From positions 1 through 9,903 of the forward strand of contig NW_021827791.1 in the NCBI RefSeq assembly GCF_006345805.1: DNA of 9,903 nt, read 5' to 3'. Below the pieces are notes generated by a model. That model was not told the DNA's origin. It worked only from the letters and a program-made list of their open reading frames with translations, and did no database searches. Origin of the DNA: Octopus sinensis. Lineage: Eukaryota. Positions 9 to 9,903 of the stretch are shown in pieces (position 1 is the first letter of the stretch; each line of letters starts with the position of its first letter). The translations under genes and the position numbers were made by a program.

Positions 9-335
9 GTGACTTTGGGATTATCATTGCAGTTTTGGGTCTTTATTCGACATCAATTGGTTTATTTTAATGATGGAGGTTGTAGGAAATGATTGCACCG
101 GGGAACACCATGCGGCCATTCGAGTGGTGGCCTGTCACTCGCCAGTGATGTCTTCTTCCGATTATATTCTCAAAGAACGCTACAAAATTAGCTCCAAGAG
201 TTCTCCTGCGAAAATGACCGTTTAACCCCAAATTTACTTGCAGGGAGACATTTCGTGGAAGATTGGTTGCAATTCTTGACAATTCAGACACTTCCGTGAT
301 TAATCGACTCGACTTGTCTTCATGTGCTTATTCAG
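9..335 (+). other. Unidentified intron-bearing gene fragment (three candidate tiny introns: 9-32, 60-85, 220-243)
   Basis: Three GT...AG segments of 24, 26 and 24 nt match the intron size class seen elsewhere in the window. After splicing, every frame still contains stops and no family is recognisable. Confidence 0.35.
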
Positions 336-682
336 GAGATTGATGTGGACTATTCAAGAATTAAGGCTTATCCGGCTATAGATAGTCAGTGGGAGGCGAT
401 TGCTCCTCTTCGTATTTTGAGTTTCGATTGAATGTGCTGGAGAAAAGGTTACCACATTGTTTTAGTAGGTTTATTATCATTCAAAGTATATTTAAAAAAT
501 ATACTTTAAATAATATATTAAATTAATTATTTGTAGGTATTTTTCCACAGCCTTCCCAAGACCCAGTAATTCAGATAGCAAATGTTTTAAAGTCATACAA
601 CTCAGATCAGCGGTCAGAAACCAATCTAATATTCACTTTATCAGCATGTGCCCCAATTATAGGAGCGATAGTCATTTCCTTC
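336..682 (+). pseudogene. POLD1: DNA polymerase delta catalytic subunit, exonuclease-domain block (ExoI region), frameshifted
   Basis: Translates as EIDVDYSRIKAYPAIDSQWEAIAPLRILSFD(IE)CAG(R)K, then after intron 448-536 as GIFPQPSQDPVIQIANV...IFTLSACAPIIGAIVISF. This matches the Pol delta IAPLRxLSFDIECAGRKGxFPxPxxDPVIQI...CAPIxG signature. There is a -2 and a -1 deletion around DIEC (about 428-440). Confidence 0.9.
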
Positions 683-684
683 CT

Positions 685-1559
685 GGAACTCGACAATAAC
701 AAGGACGGACAACTCGCCTAGGAAGAAAACAATAAAAATTTTATATGTTAGAGAAAATTTATATGTAGGGGTAAAAAATATTGTTTTTTTAAATTATTTA
801 TAAATAAATCATTATAATACATCATAGTTATTGGTTAAAAATAATATAAAAATAAAATACTAAATAATTTTATTCTGTTTTAAAAAAAGTGTACTTAGCA
901 ATGATTCTTAAGAAATCATCCGTTTCAAATTCTTGGTAGTGATAACAAATTACTTTCAGTTCTTCTTCCTTTTTAAAGTCAGATTTAGGTATTCCAATTT
1001 TCCAATTTTCCGCATTCGCTTGACACATCCTCAATACTTTCTTCTTCTAGCACACAAAAAGTACATTCATTAGATTTGTCAGGTGAGGATGCGCGGTTGA
1101 AAAAAACTATTAAGAACCCGATGCCAAGATTCTAGTACATTTGAAGTTCTTGGAACAGATGATTTGATCCTTTCAAACCATGACCAAAATGAAACATCAT
1201 AACTTGGCGATTCACCATCAAGTCCGGGAATAAATTGTTTTTTGAAATATCCAAAAATTCATCTAGCTTTGTCCCTTTCGGTCAGTTCCTTTCTGCATAT
1301 TAAAGCAGATTTTTTCGAATTGGAAAAGAACCATCCTTCTCATCAATAAAAGCCAGAGAAAAGCAATCTCTGATATCTGGTGTGCCACTCTTTATCTTTG
1401 TATTGTACACAAAGTCCCTCGGCTTGGACTCTCCTCTCAAATCATCTGCCCAAGTGAAAGTTGCACCCCGACACCCTAGCCGAAGTAAAACTGCAGCCGA
1501 AGAGTTAATTAGCCTCTTTTCAAAGTCCAAAACAATTGTTCTGGGTCACTGTCAGTTAG
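685..1559 (-). mobile_element. Truncated Mutator-like (MULE) DNA transposon remnant: one putative terminus (about 685-722) plus degenerate transposase C-terminal half (about 865-1555)
   Basis: Minus strand, across frameshifts and stops: PRTIVLDFEKRLIN..F..ARVSGCNFHL, FSLAF, FGYFKKQFI, FWSWFERIKSSVPRTSNVLESWHRVLN..AHPHL. These are the MULE DFE, GCxFH, RTNNxxExWH and HP motifs. A GC-richer GGAACTCGACAA...GGACAACTCGCC block lies at the Pol delta breakpoint. No second terminus was found. Confidence 0.85.
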
Positions 1560-1588
1560 GTTTTGACCTCATTAAAAAAGTGCGTCAG

Positions 1589-3638
1589 CCTAATGCTGCT
1601 GATTAACCTCGTCGAAATGGCCAGAGTGGCGGGAATTCCTATTTCGTATATCTCTAAAAGAGGGCAGCAAATCAAAGTTGTGTCTCAACTGCTCAGAAAA
1701 GTGTTTTTTGGGTTATTTATTGGCAGTGTCGAGCACGTAGCACTCTCATTCCTAATTTGAAGGGAAGTGGAGACGAGGAGTTCACAGGAGCCACAGTTAT
1801 TGAGCCTGTGAAAGGGTTTTGGGGTCTTTTAGTTAATTTAAGTTATTTTAATTACCCAATTGCCACATTGGACTTTACTTCGTTGTATCCTTCGATAATG
1901 ATAGCTCATAACTTGTGCTATTCGACTCTTCTTGGGAGTTCATTTGAAGGGTTGTGGGTGTTTTATGTGTGAAGGCTCTCTGTGGTAGACTATGAGGTGT
2001 CGCCGACCGGAAATACGTTTGTTAGAAGCAATATTCAGAAAGGTCTTCTTCCTGAGATTCTTGAAGATTTGCTAAAAGCTAGAAAAAAGTGTTTTGAGGT
2101 CGAAATATATTTTAGAGCTAAACTTGAACTCAAATCAGAGACAGATCCAGTTCGGAGACAAATTCTAGATGGGAGACAACTTGCTTTAAAACTCTCGGCT
2201 AATTCTGTCTATGGGTTTACACTGGGGCACAAAACGGGCGTCTGCCTTGTTGGAAATATCTCAAGTGTGAACTTTTTTCTATTCAAAATTGCAGAGTGTG
2301 ACATCTTATGATCGAGAAATGATCGAAATGACTAAAATGAAATTGAACTTAATATAATATTCGAAATGGATATGAGTTTGATACTAAGGTTATCTACGGA
2401 GATATTGACTCGGTGATGTGTCGGTTTGGCTTTCAAGATGTCCAAAGGACCATGGAAGTGGGTTTTGAGGCAGCCAAGTATGTCTCCTCCCGATTTCCCC
2501 CTCCAATCAATTTAGAATTCGAAAAAGTATATTTATTCATATTTTTAAACCAGATTTATTATCCATATCTTCTAATAAATAAAAAACGTTACGCGGGAGT
2601 TGTATTTCCCGCGGGATCGTACAGTAAAGACAAGACTGACTATGAATCTGACCAGATTGACTGTAAGGGAATTGAGAATGTGAGAAGAGACAACTGCACG
2701 TTGGTGGCAAATCTGATTTCTGACTGTCTGAGGATAATTTTAGTGAACAGGTCATTATATATGGTCTGATTGGCAGAGATCCTGAGGAGGCTGTAAATCA
2801 CGTGAAGAAGACAATTTCTGAGTTGTTGAGTAATAAAGTGGATATTTCTCATCTTGTGATATCCAGAGAGCTCACAAGAAGAATATGCTGGCAAACAAGC
2901 TCATGTAGGAATTGGCAGCTCGGTTTGATTTTTTATTGATGGTTTAGAATGAAAAAGAGGGATCCTGGGACTGCTCCAAAAATCGGGGACCGTGTTCAGT
3001 ATGTGATCATTGCTGGGACTAAAGGGACAGCAGCATATTTAAAATCAGAGGTTCTGTTTAGTAATGATGGTTAAGGACCCTTTGTATGTACTTGAGAACA
3101 ACATTCCTATCGACACTGATTATTACTTCAACAATCAACTCAAAAAACCAATTTTACGAATTGTTGAGCCAATCTTGGGGGCAAAGACCGAGTCAATCCT
3201 TTTTGGTAAGTTCTATAATTGTGATAGTTAAGCTGGCGAACATGTCAATCAGAAGAAAATTATGACATCTAAAGTTGGAGGGTTGATGAGCTTTGTAAAG
3301 AAGTCGTTTTTATGTTTAAAGTGTCGTGTCCTAATGAAGGGTCACTTTATGGTTTATTTGGACAGAAGGTAATCGAGCTCTCTGTGACAATTGTGAGGAT
3401 GTGAGGAATCAGTATTCCGAGACTTATATCCGCCAGATGAGACAGTTAGAAGAACGGTTTTCTACATTGTGGGTTGAGTGCCAGCGATGTCAGGGGAGTT
3501 TTCATGATCAAGTTATATGTTCAAAGTTGGTTGTTGTTTGTGTGTTTTAGTCGTGATTGTCCTATTTTCTATATGCGAGTTAAGGCTAGAAAAGATTTGA
3601 AGGAAGTCTCTGATATTGTCGATCGTTTTGATTGGTAG
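1589..3638 (+). pseudogene. POLD1: DNA polymerase delta catalytic subunit, polymerase domain and CysA/CysB tail; 12 internal tiny introns; multiple frameshifts
   Basis: Motifs: [48 protein letters not shown] (motif A), [17 protein letters not shown] (motif B), YGDIDS (motif C variant), KKRYAG, KGIE.VRRDN, KQAHV, GDRVQY, EDPLYV, CLKC/CDNC, CQRCQGS...CSNRDCPIFY; stop TAG at 3636-3638. Introns: 1701-1726, 1816-1842, 1951-1974, 2089-2115, 2265-2294, 2527-2553, 2751-2776, 2923-2947, 3051-3075, 3206-3232, 3341-3365, 3526-3550, plus a probable one at 1560-1588. Indels near 2220, 2251, 2340, 2351, 2880 and 2908. Confidence 0.95.
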
Positions 3639-3832
3639 TTTTAAAATCTTTTTTGATATATTTTGTCACCGTCCAGACCGGCCGGGGCGCCAGATCGGTC
3701 AGGTCAATTATCTAAATACAAAACAAATATTTTTCCTACAAAACATTTCATTGCAAAAAAATATTGATAATAAAAAAATAAAATCTTATTAATAAAAAAG
3801 TTCTAAAAAGTTGAAAAGATTAGCATTAATCA

Positions 3833-4381
3833 ATGGTTTTAGTTGAATTAACTCGAGACACCCTCGAAAAAATTAGGGAGTATTTGGAATCAGGCCACTT
3901 TGATGATTCCTTGAGTTCGGAAGAAAGGGCACGAATACGGAGATATGCCAAAAATTTAGTTTCAAGGAGAACAACACCTACATTTCTAAAAATGGCTCAA
4001 AGTTGCGTTTTTTTTGTATCGAAGACACTGAACTTAAGTTAAAATTCATTGAAGTAGTGTATTTGTTTATTTAAATTAGGCTCAACACAATCTTAATCAC
4101 TTTGGACATGATAAATTGTACAGTTTATTGACACTCACCATTTATGGTGCCAGACGTACTGATGTGGAAAATGGAAATATGATGAAGTTGAAAGTGGCGA
4201 TGAAATTTTAATACGCCATGATGGGGATGCAAACCCGGGTTATAGAAAATACCCATTATACGACGAGATATCTGCACAAAAATATATTGTGAAAAATAGG
4301 GATCGAGAACTCGTAACGATAATTAATGAAGAGGATGAAAAAGATCAAAGGATCCATATTAGCAGAGTAAAAAAACTTTAA
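3833..4381 (+). pseudogene. Integrase/transposase remnant of the Ginger-like element (His part of the HHCC zinc finger fused to the C-terminal domain; DDE core absent)
   Basis: MVLV..IREYL..EERARIRRYAKN, -1 shift near 3955, FSFKE..KLKFIE, intron 4054-4079, AQHNLNHFGHDKLYSLL..IYGARRTDV. The frame then jumps near 4166 to ..SGDEILIRH..YIV..QRIHISRVKKL, stop at 4379-4381. No CxxC or D,D35E core lies in between. Confidence 0.7.
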
Positions 4382-4560
4382 CTGCAAATATTCATGGGGT
4401 TCGTTCTGTGTTTTTTCTCGTGTCATATTTACTTAATATATTGCGATCCTGAGGGGCAACGTCTTCTCGATCATCAGCAGCTTAAGATTATGATAATCAT
4501 TTTCGCTCAATATCTTTTTACTTAATTGTGAAATAATTGTGCCATTGTTACAAATTCGAC

Positions 4561-4620
4561 GCGGCCGAAGGCCGCATAGGGAAAAATATTCACATTGAAT
4601 CATCCGGCCGTAGGCCGGAT
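4561..4620. repeat. Two perfect GC-rich mini-hairpins with GNA triloops (4561-4575 and 4602-4620)
   Basis: GCGGCC-GAA-GGCCGC and ATCCGGCC-GTA-GGCCGGAT, read directly from otherwise AT-rich DNA. Confidence 0.9.
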
Positions 4621-5349
4621 TGTATTTTAGAGTTTTTATGATAAAAATAGAAATTTACAACATTTTTAAAAATTAAAAATGGATTTTTCTAATAAACTTT
4701 ATTGTTGAGAATTGTTTGGCTAACCTTGGTTAAAGCGTTTTTAAATAAAATGCAAAATCAATACGGTAATTATCTGGAAATGACTTGATGTTGGTTTTTT
4801 GTGAACTCAGTAACTTCAATATTTTGGCAAAAATAATATTAAAATCAACAAAAAAATGAACAGAAAAAGAAAATAGCTTCCGAAAGGTAGTTTTTATTAA
4901 AAATTTTATACATAACCGATCTGGCGCCCCGACCTATCTGGACGGTGACATATTTTTTCAATTAATTAGTTTATATGAAGAATTTTGTCAAAGTGATAGT
5001 TTTGAACTCAATCCATCGTTTTGTGTTATTTACTATAAATGGGAGGTAATTATATCATATAAATTAAACAAAACAAAAAATGTGATTGTGTTTTAATATA
5101 CATTCTGGAACAAATTCTATATGAAAAAAAATAAAGTTAGTCACTAGGGAAATTAAACAAATTAACTGTTTTGTTAGAAAAATTAAAGTTTGTTGTTTTT
5201 GTAATAACTGCCAAAAATTTACAAAATCGTAGATTTTGAATTCGAGGTTTTACTTTTTTGTGAAGAGTCTCTTGAATATTTCGATATGTTTATGAATCTG
5301 TTTGTTAATTCCGCTCTCTAATGACGCTATCAAATGTTTGCCATGTTTG

Positions 5350-5830
5350 GTGAGATGGAGAATGCAGAAAAAGAAAATTAGTTTCAATTATATTTATGTA
5401 AGCATATTGACCACCTGAAGCAGGTCGAGGTTGAGAAATGCCATAAATACGATCTATTGACAGGGAAGTTGTCCATTTTGTACGACGCTCAAGTGAAAAT
5501 AATTCCACTGATTTTGACTTGGGACGGGCTTGTTTCTAAGTTTTTTAAGAAATACATTGAAAAGTTGGCTATCGAAGACGCAACTCAGTCTTATATACAA
5601 TCAGTTGTATTGAAGAAAGCATTGGAGAGTATGATTGTTGAGCATAGGCATGGGATCAGAATCACTGATGAGGAGATAAATTCACCCATTAGTCTCCTAA
5701 TTGAAGCAAGTCATTTGTACAAAGTTAATATGTAGAATGAGGGAAAAAGAGTCGTAACTAACTTGGAGACATAGGATCAAAGAGTGGTGTTGGTTACTTC
5801 CTTCTCTAAAAGAAGGAGATTAACCTCCAG
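5350..5830 (+). mobile_element. 3' fragment of a non-LTR retrotransposon with a restriction-like endonuclease (R2/R4-type) C-terminus
   Basis: DHLKQVEVEKCHKYDLLTGKL..VKIIPLILTWDGLVSKFFKKY..YIQSVVLKK.LE resembles the EKxxKYxxL...IIPxxxTWDG...YIQSxVLKK tail of RLE LINEs. The upstream PD..D/ExK region is degenerate, no RT domain is present, and the boundaries are approximate. Confidence 0.7.
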
Positions 5831-6041: not shown

Positions 6042-7105
6042 TTAAAATTTTTTTAAAGATTCCAAAATTTTCAAAATTTCGTAAAATTCAGGCCTTTAAT
6101 ATTTATATATAAACTACCTTTTGGAATTTTCATATGCACAACAAAATTTTACAAGGTCAAGTAACACGGAAGGATATGCTTGTTTATATACATTTCTAAA
6201 AATATCAACGTTGACTAAAAAATTTTCATTTCTTGGAAGAACGTCAGGGTCGCTGCCAACTCTATTAATTAGCTAAAAAATTTCAACATGGTTTATTGAT
6301 ACCTCACATAGAATAATCCCAAATGAATAAACATCAGCTTTATAATTGTATTCCATCCCATTTAGTATTTCTGGAGCCATATAGAATACACTTCCCACGA
6401 CTGAATTTCGACCTTGTGAAGATTCGTAAATATTTTCATAAAACGTTTTGGACAGTCCAAAATCAGCAACAACCACAACTCCGTTCTTTACATATTTTAA
6501 TGTACTAATTGTACTTTTTTAATCAGACAATTATCCGATTTCAGATCTCTGTGCATAATATTTTGATTGTTCAAATACTTCTAACGAATAGATTACATAT
6601 TAGTACAAACCATTCCACATGCGATATCGACTGATATATCGATCTTACGTTTTAACGTAATGTTTATAGTTGAATTTAGTAACAATTGTTCCAATGATCC
6701 TCCACTGGCATATTCTGTAGAATAAAAACAAATGAAAACCAATCACCATCGAAATATGTTCCAGATTTTTATTTCTGCCAAAAAACAGCAAAATATTTGG
6801 ATGTCGTAATTTATTCCAAATTGAGACCTTTTGAGTTATTTAAAATATTTAACCTCTTTAATGGATGAAGAAGTCAAATCGTCTTTCAGCCATTTTACTT
6901 CTTTGATTGCGACTATTTCATTTGTTTTGAGAATCTTTCCCTATAAAAATAAGATTACGATTAATAAAAACCAAATATACTTTTCCATATTTTCCTTCAC
7001 CGATAAGCTTGTCATAAAAAATTTCGTTTTTTGCAAAGTAAAAAATATTTTGAGATACTTGTTCTGTGTAGCTTTTTATCTACGATCAGATCGTTCGTAC
7101 TCCAT
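6042..7105 (-). CDS. LIMK/TESK-like (TKL group) protein kinase, single-domain, apparently intact (about 282 aa; alternative start at 7150 gives about 286 aa)
   Basis: Spliced frame is open: IGEGKYGKVY, VAIK, HPNIL, EYASGGSL, HRDLKSDNCLIK, VVADFGLS, VVGSVFYMAPE, KADVYSFGIILCE, RVGSDPDVLPR, CC..KRP; stop TAA at 6044-6042. Introns: 6941-6971, 6828-6853, 6715-6739, 6581-6610, 6486-6514, 6273-6302, 6094-6117. The first exon(s) are ambiguous. Confidence 0.9.
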
Positions 7106-7236
7106 GTTTTTCTAAATTTAAATAAATTATTTTTACTTTTTATTCCACATTTCTTATTATTGTGAAATGATATGTTTAAATGACACAAATGCGGTATTTT
7201 ATTTATTTATCAATCCGCATCTATACCATTTCCCAT

Positions 7237-7425
7237 ACTAAATGGGATTTGCACCAAACTAAGTGGGATTAGCAGAAAACTAAATGGGATTAACGTCAAA
7301 CTAAATGGGATTAACATCAAACTAAGTGGGATTAACGTCAAACTAAGTGAGATTAATACCAAACTAAATGGGATTAATACCAAACAATATGGGATTAATA
7401 GCAAATTAAATGGGATTAACACTAA
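7237..7425 (+). repeat. Left TIR array: 9 x 21-bp units, consensus ACTAAATGGGATTAAYRYCAA
   Basis: Contiguous units start at 7237, 7258, 7279, 7300, 7321, 7342, 7363, 7384 and 7405, with no spacers. Confidence 0.95.
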
Positions 7426-7766
7426 AAAATTCTTTTTTTTAAATTTTATGTTAATGTCGGCAATATTTCGGCAAATTTGTTTGAGGCAAGTACGGATTAA
7501 ACATGGTGGTCCAGTTACTATGGTGTTGGACAATGCACCAGCTCACAACGGTATCGAAGAAGTTTGCTTCTAAAAAAACATCGCTTCTAAAAAAACCAAA
7601 TTTTATTCCAACAAGGAGAAGGCTTATCAATTAAAGAGTATCGAACACGGATACTTGAACAAATAATTGTGGATGGAATGAAAACCATTACGTCTAAAGA
7701 TTGTGTAATCTTTATTTCTGGAATACAGGGAAATATAAATATGGTTAACATAAAAAAATGAATTTT

Positions 7767-7871
7767 TTGGTATTAATCCCATTTAGTTTGGTGTTGATCC
7801 CATTTAGTTTGACGTTAATCCCATTTAGTTTTCTGCTAGTCCCACTTAGTTTGGTGTTAATCCCATTTAGT
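7767..7871 (-). repeat. Right TIR array: 5 x 21-bp units, inverted relative to 7237-7425
   Basis: The reverse complement reproduces the left units in order, including the diagnostic unit 2 (AGTGGGAyTAGCAGAAA) and unit 3 (AACGTCAA). Confidence 0.95.
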
Positions 7872-8470
7872 ATGGTATAGATAAAAAAGAGGACATTAAT
7901 TAATTGTACAAATAATAATCATTAAAAACAAACTCTAATGATTAAATGACGCACACGATGTTTTATTTAATTCTTAGAAATAAAAGACAAATATACTGCA
8001 ATTTCTTAAATCCGTCGCTTTTCGATTCAGCTTCTTTTAATTATTTCGATGGATTATTTAAAATCCTCTCTTCAAATTAATCAAAATTTTAAAATATTTA
8101 TTACACGCATCATTGTAATTGTGACGGATTGTGTTAAACTTTTTAGCAACAAAAAATTTCTATACTATGCTATATTTCGGTGACCCATTTGTTTCTGCTT
8201 CTCAATTTTCCAAGATTTTTTTCTTTTTCTTCACGAGTAAAGAGAAAATTTCTCTGAAGATCTTAAATAAAATGGAACGTTTAAATGTGACAAATATCAA
8301 AAAATTTAAACATAACAACAATTCCAAAACTCAAATTTAATGAAACTGTTAAAGATTTTGACTTATTGAGTATTGAGTCATATTTAGATAGTCACTTATT
8401 TTTTTGTTAGATCTACAATTACATGTAGAAATTCTAATTTTCTCATTAATTGATAATCTAATTATGTGAC

Positions 8471-8628: not shown

Positions 8629-8809
8629 AGGCCTCACGAGACACCCGACCAGCCTCGCGAATGGCGAAGCCGTTCCCTCGGATCACAGCAATCGACAGAC
8701 GTTCCAGGAGCCAAGAAAACTCTCTTGAATCGTGACTAGTCTTTGAAATCCGTCGACCGAGCGAGTGAAGGAAGCGGAGTGTCTTGGGACCGAAGATCCA
8801 GGAGGACCT
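8629..8809. mobile_element. Possible Kolobok-like miniature non-autonomous element (181 bp)
   Basis: Sharply bounded GC-rich island flanked by TTAA (8625-8628 and 8810-8813), with ends AGGCCTC... and ...GAGGACCT forming a short imperfect TIR. AGG termini with TTAA fit Kolobok better than piggyBac (CC ends). Confidence 0.5.
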
Positions 8810-9286
8810 TTAATTAGACCGCGACTCATTCTTATCATTTAATAATTTACTAAATTAGCTAAAAACTCTCTCATTTTGAAAAAAAATTATATTTGTAGGA
8901 ATTTAATTATCAAAAATTAATTTTTTTGGTGGAAAACCTAAATTTCTTGAGTTATTTCTAGCGTGCAAGTATATTTTGCAGCAATGTCCTCGTACAAAGG
9001 TTATGTAAAGAATAGTTTGGAATATCAAATTTTAAAAGATGCTTTACAGGATAAATTTCCTGAACATCTTACAAAGCAAAAAAATATAGACTAGTTAAGA
9101 AAATTGAAAATTTTACTGTAATTGAAACTTAGAGGTAAAAAAAAACAAAAAAAAACTTAGAGGTATACGACAAAAAATAATCAAATTTATTGAAAAAGAA
9201 TACTATTCCAAATTTAAACTAATATTAAGAATATTAATTTTTTGTAAAATTGGCTCTCGAATCGATAGATTCGAATATATTAATAA

Positions 9287-9903
9287 CTAGCTCGGCAGCT
9301 CGCTTCGCTCACCGCGACCTAGCTCCTGCGGAGGGCCTGTTTCATCAAACAACTATAAGTTTATGTAGATGTATAAAACTACCTGGTTTAATGTAACCCT
9401 ATTCTATCGCCTGTTGATAAACGATGTTTGTCGTCCGTCCTTCCTTGGCATATATGAATAAATTTTCTCTTCTGCCTACCCTCGAGCATCCCACATACAG
9501 CTGTCCATGTGAAAAGCACTCACTCTCTAAAAATAACCCAACTACCTTTAATGACTGTCCCTGGGCCTTGTTTATTGTCATTGCAAAACTCATCCTCAAA
9601 GGAAATTGCAGCCTTTTAAATCTAAATGGTAATTCATCAGAAATTATCGGAATTCGTGGAATATAAACATCCTCACCTCTATACTTACCTGTTAATATCG
9701 TAGCCTCTATTACGTTAGCCATCAAATTTTTGATAACTAACCTCGTTCCGTTGCATAATTTAGGTGGCGCAAGATTTCGTAATAAAACCACTGGAACGCC
9801 TATCTTTAACTTTAAAAGATGATTCGGCATTCCAGAGGGATCTAAGGATTTTAAAAAATTCAATCCGGTTGAATTTTTAGAAAATAACAAAAAAATAAAG
9901 AAA
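9287..9903 (-). mobile_element. Helitron 3' portion, running off the right edge of the window
   Basis: A PIF1-type helicase C-terminus is followed about 110 nt downstream by a GC-rich imperfect hairpin (9293-9314) and a terminal CTAG (9290-9287) followed by T on the minus strand. Confidence 0.9.
9399..9870 (-). CDS. Helitron RepHel PIF1-like SF1 helicase C-terminal segment (partial)
   Basis: [82 protein letters not shown]. Homology breaks down above about 9870. Confidence 0.9.

What the first reader, a model, noticed from the sequence alone, without database searches (positions are those of the whole stretch)
336..1600. A half-MULE replaces the ExoII/ExoIII core of DNA polymerase delta
The gene stops at ..GAIVISF (682) and resumes at [12 protein letters not shown] (1589). 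In known Pol delta proteins about 150-160 residues, including the ExoII (NFD) and ExoIII (YCLKD) motifs, lie between these points. The gap holds a MULE with only one terminus and the C-terminal half of its transposase, so one deletion appears to have removed the other half of the element plus flanking exons, as expected for a transposon-adjacent deletion. Pol delta is essential, so an intact paralog or haplotype should exist. If none does, this organism has lost or replaced its lagging-strand polymerase.
Basis: partly seen in the sequence, partly recalled or inferred. Interest (0 to 1): 0.7.

Follow-up and report, generated by a model that had tools for sequence, protein, structure and literature searches.

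The report
Dead Pol delta copy holding MULE remnant
This is a broken, non-functional copy of the DNA polymerase delta gene. A piece of a Mutator-like transposon sits where about 150 codons of the proofreading domain used to be, which is an ordinary way for a gene copy to die and not a sign that the organism lost the enzyme.

Summary
A family-B DNA polymerase delta (POLD1) gene runs on the + strand from at least nt 336 to the TAG at 3636-3638. It breaks after ...GAIVISF (nt 682) and resumes at about 1572-1590 ([18 protein letters not shown]). About 150 residues, including ExoII and ExoIII, have no match anywhere in the window.

The gap holds the 3' half of a FLYWCH-type Mutator-like element on the minus strand.
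- Transposase profile positions 236-457 of 458 map to nt 1545->873. The remnant carries 2 frameshifts and 5 stops.
- A terminal-repeat motif (TAGGCGAGTTG, 710-720) is shared with related elements.

- Seven small indels disrupt the remaining exons.
- One pair of indels puts a TGA inside the ExoI FDIE motif.
- YGDTDS has become YGDIDS.

A neighbouring kinase gene and a Pif1-type ORF have no frame disruption. General assembly noise is therefore unlikely (P about 0.01).

The locus is a decaying pseudogene or null allele in a transposon-rich region. Its 25-39 nt introns point to a myxobolid myxozoan or a dicyemid. I could not find or rule out an intact copy: the source genome is not in the searchable collections. 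Essentiality makes an intact copy the default expectation. Interest is low.

The parts
31..225 (+). Possible upstream POLD1 exon (FGSLFDINWFILMMEVVGNDC...SSPAKMT), followed by a putative 110-nt intron at 226-335
   Evidence: Only weak, non-significant similarity to the VVGCNW...PAGKY region of POLD1 (profile E 0.14; tblastn piece). Far more diverged than the downstream exons.
336..447 (+). POLD1 exon with the ExoI region. It is broken by a 2-nt loss at 429 and a 1-nt loss at 442, so FDIECAGRKG reads FD*MCWRKG (TGA at 429-431).
448..536 (+). 89-nt GT-AG intron, unusually long for this gene. It contains an AT-rich palindrome.
   Evidence: Exon ends read from the sequence. Inverted repeat I17/I14 neighbourhood.
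537..682 (+). POLD1 exon GIFPQPSQDPVIQIAN...CAPIIGAIVISF, the last host codons before the insert
   Evidence: tblastn and profile alignments. Coordinates.
683..722 (-). MULE terminal region. It holds the motif TAGGCGAGTTG (710-720, minus strand) and a degenerate second copy (GGAACTCGAC, 685-694, + strand).
   Evidence: The exact 11-mer occurs once in the window. It recurs in L001 at the same distance of about 150 nt past the transposase stop. It occurs three times inside the 69-nt TIRs of L084. It is absent from the other 83 loci.
723..869 (-). AT-rich untranslated 3' part of the MULE, between the transposase stop and the terminal motif
   Evidence: Sequence. Partial nucleotide similarity to L001 (66.5% over window 838-1265; alignment).
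870..1548 (-). Decayed C-terminal half of a FLYWCH-type MULE transposase: profile positions 236-457 of 458, stop codon at 870-872, 2 frameshifts (about 1490 and 1100) and 5 in-frame stops
1549..1571 (.). Right junction zone of 23 nt that cannot be assigned to either the MULE or POLD1
   Evidence: The MULE profile ends at 1545-1548. The POLD1 profile starts at 1572.
1572..3638 (+). Rest of POLD1: polymerase domain and the CysA/CysB zinc modules, ending at TAG 3636-3638. It has 12 mini-introns of 25-39 nt and five more small indels: +2 at 2222-2223, -1 at 2250, +1 at 2352, +1 (or -8) at 2880, and +1 at 2908.

Best explanation
The locus is a non-functional copy of the gene for the catalytic subunit of DNA polymerase delta. 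It could be a paralogous duplicate or a null allele/haplotype. It lies in a transposon-rich stretch of a genome with ultra-short introns.

Proposed history:
1. A FLYWCH-type Mutator-like element inserted in minus orientation into the exon, directly after the Phe codon that ends at nt 682.
2. Later a deletion removed the 5' half of the element and about 150 codons of the host gene, including ExoII and ExoIII. One end of the deletion lay inside the transposase ORF, near profile position 236. The other lay in the POLD1 exon just upstream of LRLL-KLM.
3. The copy went on decaying. Seven small slippage-type indels break the remaining exons, and the first pair destroys the ExoI FDIE motif.

What is shown: the gap, the identity and extent of the MULE fragment, the terminal motif at the left junction, the extra lesions, and the absence of any usable splice donor before the TAG at 719-721.

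What is inferred: the order and number of events, and that an intact POLD1 exists elsewhere. The second rests on the established essentiality of Pol delta in eukaryotes.
For: - Gap and missing motifs.
- MULE identity: 716 hits, best E 1.4e-33; relatives carry PF10551 MULE and PF04500 FLYWCH.
- MULE extent: (profile 236-457 of 458 maps to nt 1545->873, with 2 frameshifts and 5 stops).
- Terminal motif.
- Extra POLD1 lesions with coordinates.
- Changes at ultra-conserved sites: 4 of 71, the 5th highest of about 126 sequences, including YGDTDS->YGDIDS.
- No GT donor in 683-721, so translation ends at TAG 719-721.
- Control for assembly noise: a kinase domain (Pfam positions 4-248 of 258, spanning several mini-introns) and a 163-aa Pif1-type ORF show no frame disruption. 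At POLD1's indel density (7 in 1974 coding nt), 4.3 indels would be expected in those 1224 nt. The Poisson P of seeing none is 0.013.
- Context: relatives of this MULE come from assemblies GCA_041192925.1 and GCA_024449705.1. MULEs are the most abundant DNA transposons in a myxobolid genome (PMC11557904).
Against: - No intact POLD1 from the same organism was found. The closest proteins are 59-62% identical and the closest metagenome loci 58%. Exact look-ups of window ORFs found nothing. Copy number therefore remains untested.
- All POLD1 lesions outside the gap are indels, with no nonsense substitution, whereas the MULE remnant has 5 stops and 2 frameshifts. This fits the insertion of an already decayed element. 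An indel-only pattern is also what consensus errors in a noisy long-read assembly look like.
- The excess of changes at conserved sites could reflect a fast-evolving parasite lineage rather than relaxed constraint. Two other sequences in the set score higher.
- The element's exact terminal base and its 9-bp target-site duplication cannot be checked with only one end present.
Confidence: 0.82

Rival explanations
1. The small indels are assembly or consensus errors. The locus would then be a recently disrupted allele, a young null haplotype carrying only the MULE-plus-deletion lesion, rather than a long-dead pseudogene.
For: - All seven lesions are 1-2 nt length changes next to identical bases or in dinucleotide repeats.
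- There are no nonsense substitutions in 658 codons.
- The indel density is similar in POLD1 (3.5 per kb) and in the MULE remnant (3.0 per kb).
Against: - Two other coding stretches in the same window (1224 nt) have no frame disruption, P about 0.013 under a uniform rate.
- Ultra-conserved residues are also substituted.
- Two of the lesions are 2-nt changes, which are less typical of consensus errors.
Confidence: 0.18
2. The MULE piece never transposed into this site. A double-strand break or deletion in the POLD1 copy was patched with a captured fragment of a MULE (filler DNA).
For: The fragment is truncated inside the ORF at one side. No target-site duplication or second end can be shown.
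Against: The other side of the fragment runs through the element's 3' untranslated part to the TIR-type motif within 3-38 nt of the host junction. This is what a true insertion end looks like.
Confidence: 0.1
3. The structure is a misassembly: a chimeric join or a collapse at a repeated MULE.
For: MULEs are highly repeated in related genomes (PMC11557904). No reads were available.
Against: - The right junction joins the MULE interior to unique POLD1 sequence, with no shared repeat that could mislead an assembler.
- The left junction falls at an element end.
- Other lesions independently mark the gene as decayed.
Confidence: 0.04
4. The locus encodes a working, proofreading-deficient Pol delta, or it is the organism's only POLD1.
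For: No other copy could be found in the accessible data.
Against: - In-frame TGA at 429-431.
- TAG at 719-721 with no splice donor before it.
- Five further uncompensated frameshifts in the polymerase domain.
- Failure to find another copy only reflects that the source genome is not in the collections.
Confidence: 0.01

Closest known systems
Transposon-disrupted pseudogenes and Mutator-adjacent deletions (Mu elements of maize)
   Same: A MULE end stays in place while a deletion removes part of the element and neighbouring host DNA. 'Mu adjacent deletions' and 9-bp target-site duplications are treated as known behaviour in PMC2774946.
   Different: Here the event is ancient and fixed in an assembly. 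It is in an animal-type genome. No second end or target-site duplication is left to confirm the mechanism.
FLYWCH-bearing animal MULEs (the Phantom/Muta1 group in the taxonomy of PMC6446971)
   Same: Relatives of the fragment are single-ORF transposases of about 460 aa with an N-terminal FLYWCH finger and a MULE DDE domain. They have TIRs of tens of nt. These traits are listed for Phantom and related groups.
   Different: Assignment to Phantom in particular was not tested by phylogeny. The window holds only the C-terminal 48% of the protein and has no FLYWCH part.
POLD1 / Pol3, catalytic subunit of DNA polymerase delta (PDB 6s1m, 3iay)
   Same: 59-62% identity to animal POLD1 over the retained parts. 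The polymerase motifs and both C-terminal cysteine modules are recognisable.
   Different: ExoII and ExoIII are absent. ExoI is destroyed. There are seven frameshifting indels. YGDTDS has become YGDIDS.

Membership tests
DNA polymerase delta catalytic subunit (family B polymerase) | Sequence homology across the exonuclease and polymerase domains | tested here: met
   Pfam DNA_pol_B E 1.8e-68 and DNA_pol_B_exo1 E 5e-14. Human POLD1 E 1e-103. 59-62% identity to full-length animal POLD1.
DNA polymerase delta catalytic subunit (family B polymerase) | ExoI FDIE motif with the catalytic Asp and Glu | tested here: not met
   It reads FD*MCW, with TGA at 429-431, after losses of 2 nt and 1 nt.
DNA polymerase delta catalytic subunit (family B polymerase) | ExoII (NxxxFD) and ExoIII (YCLKD) motifs | tested here: not met
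   The residues corresponding to human 372-520 and Ridgeia 333-486 have no match in any frame of the window.
DNA polymerase delta catalytic subunit (family B polymerase) | Polymerase motif A (DxxSLYPS) and motif C (YGDTDS) | tested here: inconclusive
   Motif A is present ([11 protein letters not shown]). Motif C reads YGDIDS: both Asp residues are kept, but the near-invariant Thr is replaced.
DNA polymerase delta catalytic subunit (family B polymerase) | C-terminal CysA and CysB cysteine modules | tested here: met
   CLKC...LCDNC and CQRCQGS...CSNRDCPIFY align to the references.
DNA polymerase delta catalytic subunit (family B polymerase) | A continuous reading frame after splicing (a functional gene) | tested here: not met
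   Seven small indels and the 683-1571 replacement. No splice donor before TAG 719-721.
Mutator-like element (MULE) | Transposase homologous to MULE DDE transposases | tested here: met
   The fragment itself gets no Pfam hit. It matches 716 proteins, best E 1.4e-33, and the full-length members carry PF10551. The profile alignment covers positions 236-457 of 458.
Mutator-like element (MULE) | Complete DDE catalytic core | tested here: not met
   Profile positions 1-235 are absent. These hold the FLYWCH finger and the first part of the MULE domain. The remainder carries 5 stops and 2 frameshifts.
Mutator-like element (MULE) | Terminal inverted repeats at both ends | tested here: not met
   Only one end carries the TIR-type motif (710-720). 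There is no inverted partner in the window. Related elements have paired TIRs.
Mutator-like element (MULE) | Target-site duplication of 8-11 bp (usually 9 bp) | not testable with these tools
   The second end is deleted, so nothing remains to compare.
Phantom family of MULEs | Phylogenetic placement within the Phantom clade | not tested
   Only the shared FLYWCH-plus-MULE architecture of the relatives was seen.

The most novel reading that the evidence does not exclude
No intact POLD1 exists anywhere in this genome, so a highly reduced parasite replicates its lagging strand without a canonical, proofreading Pol delta. My evidence cannot exclude this, because the source genome could not be searched. 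Every feature of the locus instead points to a redundant dead copy.
Probability: 0.01. Interest if true: 0.9.

Novelty: new member of a known kind. Interest (0 to 1): 0.12.

Why it matters
It matters little beyond annotation.
- The locus should be flagged as a POLD1 pseudogene, so that it is not taken for the organism's replicative polymerase or for evidence of an exonuclease-deficient one.
- It gives one dated-looking example of a FLYWCH-type MULE destroying a gene copy in a genome with ultra-short introns.
- The shared TAGGCGAGTTG terminal motif could help define that MULE clade's ends.
- It would become important only if a whole-genome search showed that no intact POLD1 exists.

Tried and rejected
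- My first stitching of the minus-strand ORFs used the wrong frame for the GCNFHLG segment. It gave no Pfam hit.
- The corrected stitch also gave no Pfam hit and no word-indexed hit. Only the full HMMER scan found the family.
- The first POLD1 search returned only fragments of 507 aa or less, so it could not give full-length references. I repeated it with a longer query.
- Exact look-ups of 11 window ORF variants, meant to recover the source contig and its flanks, found nothing.
- The JGI metagenome scan for close POLD1 relatives found nothing above 58% identity.
- A paper search for the two assembly accessions found nothing relevant.
- I considered that residues 333-486 might lie elsewhere in the window, as in a scrambled or inverted gene. 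tblastn at E<=10 on both strands rejected this.
- I considered splicing across 683-1589 to give an exonuclease-less protein. I rejected it because there is no GT donor before the TAG at 719-721, and the AG at 1587-1588 would leave the frame off by one.
- I considered ciliate-type codes or programmed frameshifting, prompted by the 25-nt introns. I rejected them: the exons have no in-frame TAA/TAG, the protein is animal-like, and the shifts are not at a consistent motif.
- The Rfam and tRNA scans of the window found nothing credible.
- A first invariant-site count was inflated because pre-gap residues were misaligned across the gap. I redid it on the post-gap part only.
Full report
**What the window is.** The + strand from nt 336 to the TAG at 3636-3638 carries a family-B DNA polymerase gene. 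Pfam assigns DNA_pol_B_exo1 to the first exons (E 5e-14) and DNA_pol_B to the later ones (E 1.8e-68). The best solved-structure matches are the Pol delta catalytic subunits of human (6s1m, E 1e-103) and yeast (3iay). With a 658-residue stitched query, the best database proteins are full-length animal POLD1 at 59-62% identity: fishes, amphibians, the annelid Ridgeia and Octopus.

The exons are separated by 12 GT-AG introns of 25-39 nt. There is also one 89-nt intron at 448-536 and probably one 110-nt intron at 226-335. According to PMC13644364, introns this short occur in animals only in myxobolid myxozoans and in Dicyema japonicum. A myxobolid genome is reported to consist largely of MULE and Tc1-type transposons (PMC11557904). 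The window therefore probably comes from such a parasite. That is an inference; the source could not be identified.

**Check of the observation.** The gene does stop matching after ...CAPIIGAIVISF (nt 682) and resume at [12 protein letters not shown] (nt 1590).
- Human POLD1 aligns at residues 287-371 and then 521-733.
- Ridgeia POLD1 aligns at residues 248-332 and then from 487.
- A permissive tblastn (E<=10, both strands) with three full-length POLD1 proteins found nothing credible for the missing 150-154 residues anywhere in the 9.9 kb.
- Reference sequences place NIQNFD (ExoII) and YCLKD (ExoIII) inside that stretch.
- A POLD1 profile extends the right-hand match slightly, to nt 1572 (LKKCVS aligned to lrlldk). 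The position of the ExoIII aspartate is not recovered.
- After nt 682 the frame reads LELDNNKDGQLA and stops at TAG 719-721. No GT dinucleotide occurs in 683-721, so there is no splice donor that could skip the insert.

**What fills the gap.** On the minus strand, three frames together read a pattern typical of animal Mutator-like transposases: DFEKRLINS, then GCNFHLG, then PRTSNVLESWHRVLNS.
- Pfam did not recognise the fragment, and the word-indexed search found nothing.
- A full HMMER scan gave 716 hits, 82 of them below 1e-10 and the best at 1.4e-33.
- The full-length hits are about 455-465 aa. All eight that I tested carry the MULE domain PF10551, and seven also carry an N-terminal FLYWCH finger.
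- A profile built from 50 full-length relatives aligns to nt 1545->873 at profile positions 236-457 of 458. It needs two frame changes (near 1490 and 1100) and crosses five in-frame stops.
- The transposase stop codon is at 870-872.

**The element end.**
- The 11-mer TAGGCGAGTTG occurs once in the window, at 710-720 on the minus strand, about 150 nt past the transposase stop.
- The same 11-mer lies at the same distance past the stop in the related element on L001 (assembly GCA_041192925.1).
- It occurs three times inside the 69-nt terminal inverted repeats of a complete related element on L084 (GCA_024449705.1).
- It is absent from the other 83 loci fetched.
- A degenerate second copy (GGAACTCGAC, 685-694) lies 3 nt from the last POLD1 codon.

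This is what an authentic insertion end looks like. The exact last base and the target-site duplication cannot be checked, because the other end is gone.

The rest of the gene is not intact. Locating each conserved peptide in its frame and reading the sequence gives seven small indels:
- a 2-nt loss at 429 and a 1-nt loss at 442, which together turn FDIECAGRKG into FD*MCWRKG and put a TGA at 429-431 in the ExoI catalytic motif;
- a 2-nt gain at 2222-2223 and a 1-nt loss at 2250, inside [18 protein letters not shown];
- a 1-nt shift at 2352;
- a shift at 2880;
- an extra G at 2908, inside [12 protein letters not shown].

None of the downstream shifts is compensated within its exon.

At 71 alignable columns that are at least 97% conserved among about 125 diverse Pol delta sequences, this copy differs at four: RVTG->RVAG, Y->F, G->D and YGDTDS->YGDIDS. 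That is the fifth-highest fraction in the set. The exon upstream of 336 is so diverged that it is not significant against a POLD1 profile (E 0.14).

**Are the small indels real?** They are all slippage-type length changes, and POLD1 has no nonsense substitution, so consensus error had to be considered. Two other coding stretches in the same window argue against a generally noisy assembly.
- A protein-kinase gene on the minus strand (7025-6117) covers Pfam positions 4-248 of 258, spans several mini-introns and has no frame change.
- A 163-aa Pif1-type helicase ORF (9399-9890) is uninterrupted.

At POLD1's density of 7 indels in 1974 coding nt, 4.3 would be expected in those 1224 nt. The Poisson probability of seeing none is 0.013. 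I put the chance that the indels are real at about 0.8. The conclusion that this copy cannot make a polymerase does not depend on them.

**History and mechanism.** The simplest history has three steps:
1. A MULE, probably already defective given its five stops, transposed into the exon after nt 682.
2. A later deletion, with one end in the transposase ORF and the other in the exon just before LRLL-KLM, removed the element's 5' half and about 150 host codons together with their mini-introns.
3. Neutral decay followed.

Deletions adjacent to Mutator elements are a recognised phenomenon (PMC2774946). A single deletion is sufficient but not demonstrated. Capture of a MULE fragment as filler DNA during break repair is the main alternative, and the presence of the terminal motif at the junction makes it less likely. 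Misassembly is unlikely, because the right junction joins MULE-internal sequence to unique POLD1 sequence with no shared repeat.

**Is there an intact copy?** This could not be tested.
- No protein closer than 62% identity and no metagenome locus closer than 58% was found.
- Window ORFs are not in the protein collection.

Because Pol delta is essential in eukaryotes (established knowledge) and this copy shows multiple independent lesions, a functional gene elsewhere is the default expectation. It may be a paralog or the other haplotype.

**Verdict.** The locus is an ordinary transposon-disrupted, decaying pseudogene: a new instance of a well-known kind, and of low interest.

Noticed in passing
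window 1701-3550 (12 introns) and 6117-7025 (kinase introns): Nearly all introns are 25-39 nt with plain GT...AG ends. PMC13644364 reports such lengths in animals only for myxobolid myxozoans and Dicyema japonicum. The window probably comes from one of these parasites.
   Followed up: partly
window 3664-4950: A 1.3-kb element bounded by imperfect terminal inverted repeats (arms 3653-3704 and 4910-4961, 83% complementary, core TGTCACCGTCCAGACCGGCC...). It sits 25 nt after the POLD1 stop codon. It contains GC-rich palindromes at about 4560-4620 and a 69-aa ORF (3833-4042) with no Pfam match.
   Followed up: partly
window 7210-7895: A foldback-like structure: two inverted arrays of a 21-nt repeat (8 copies at 7213-7447 and 6 copies at 7753-7895, arms up to 92% complementary). 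They flank about 300 nt that read ...VLDNAPAHN..., reminiscent of a Tc1/mariner DDE remnant. Pfam gave no hit on the short pieces.
   Followed up: partly
window 6117-7025, minus strand: An apparently intact protein-kinase gene (PK_Tyr_Ser-Thr, E 3.3e-48, profile positions 4-248 of 258), split by mini-introns and free of frameshifts or stops. I used it as a control for assembly quality.
   Followed up: yes
window 9399-9890, minus strand: An uninterrupted 163-aa ORF with a Pif1 2B domain (E 1.5e-16) and the C-terminal helicase motif (TINKAQGQS). It is either a Helitron-type helicase fragment or the 3' end of a host Pif1 gene. Upstream of the 163-aa ORF the frame closes at an in-frame stop about 10 nt from the window end, so any further helicase sequence lies beyond the window or across a frame change.
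   Followed up: partly
window 658-667 and L001 1012-1021: The 10-mer TTATAGGAGC lies exactly 50 nt outside the shared GACAACTCGCCTAG motif in both the window and L001. In the window it encodes POLD1 residues I-I-G-A. The 50 nt in between are otherwise unrelated (about 34% identity). It is probably coincidence, but unexplained.
   Followed up: partly
window 5457-5735: A 92-aa ORF (…IIPLILTWDGLVSKFFKKYIEKLAI…) that from memory resembles the C-terminal tail of some invertebrate retroelement polyproteins. It has no Pfam match and was not pursued.
   Followed up: no
window 8630-8830: A 200-nt island of markedly higher G+C in an otherwise AT-rich spacer. It has no Rfam or tRNA match, and its nature is unknown.
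   Followed up: partly
window 870-1548 compared with 336-3638: The lesion spectra differ. The MULE remnant has 5 nonsense codons and 2 frameshifts in about 670 nt. POLD1 has 7 frameshifting indels and no nonsense substitution in 1974 nt. This suggests the element was already defective when it inserted.
   Followed up: partly
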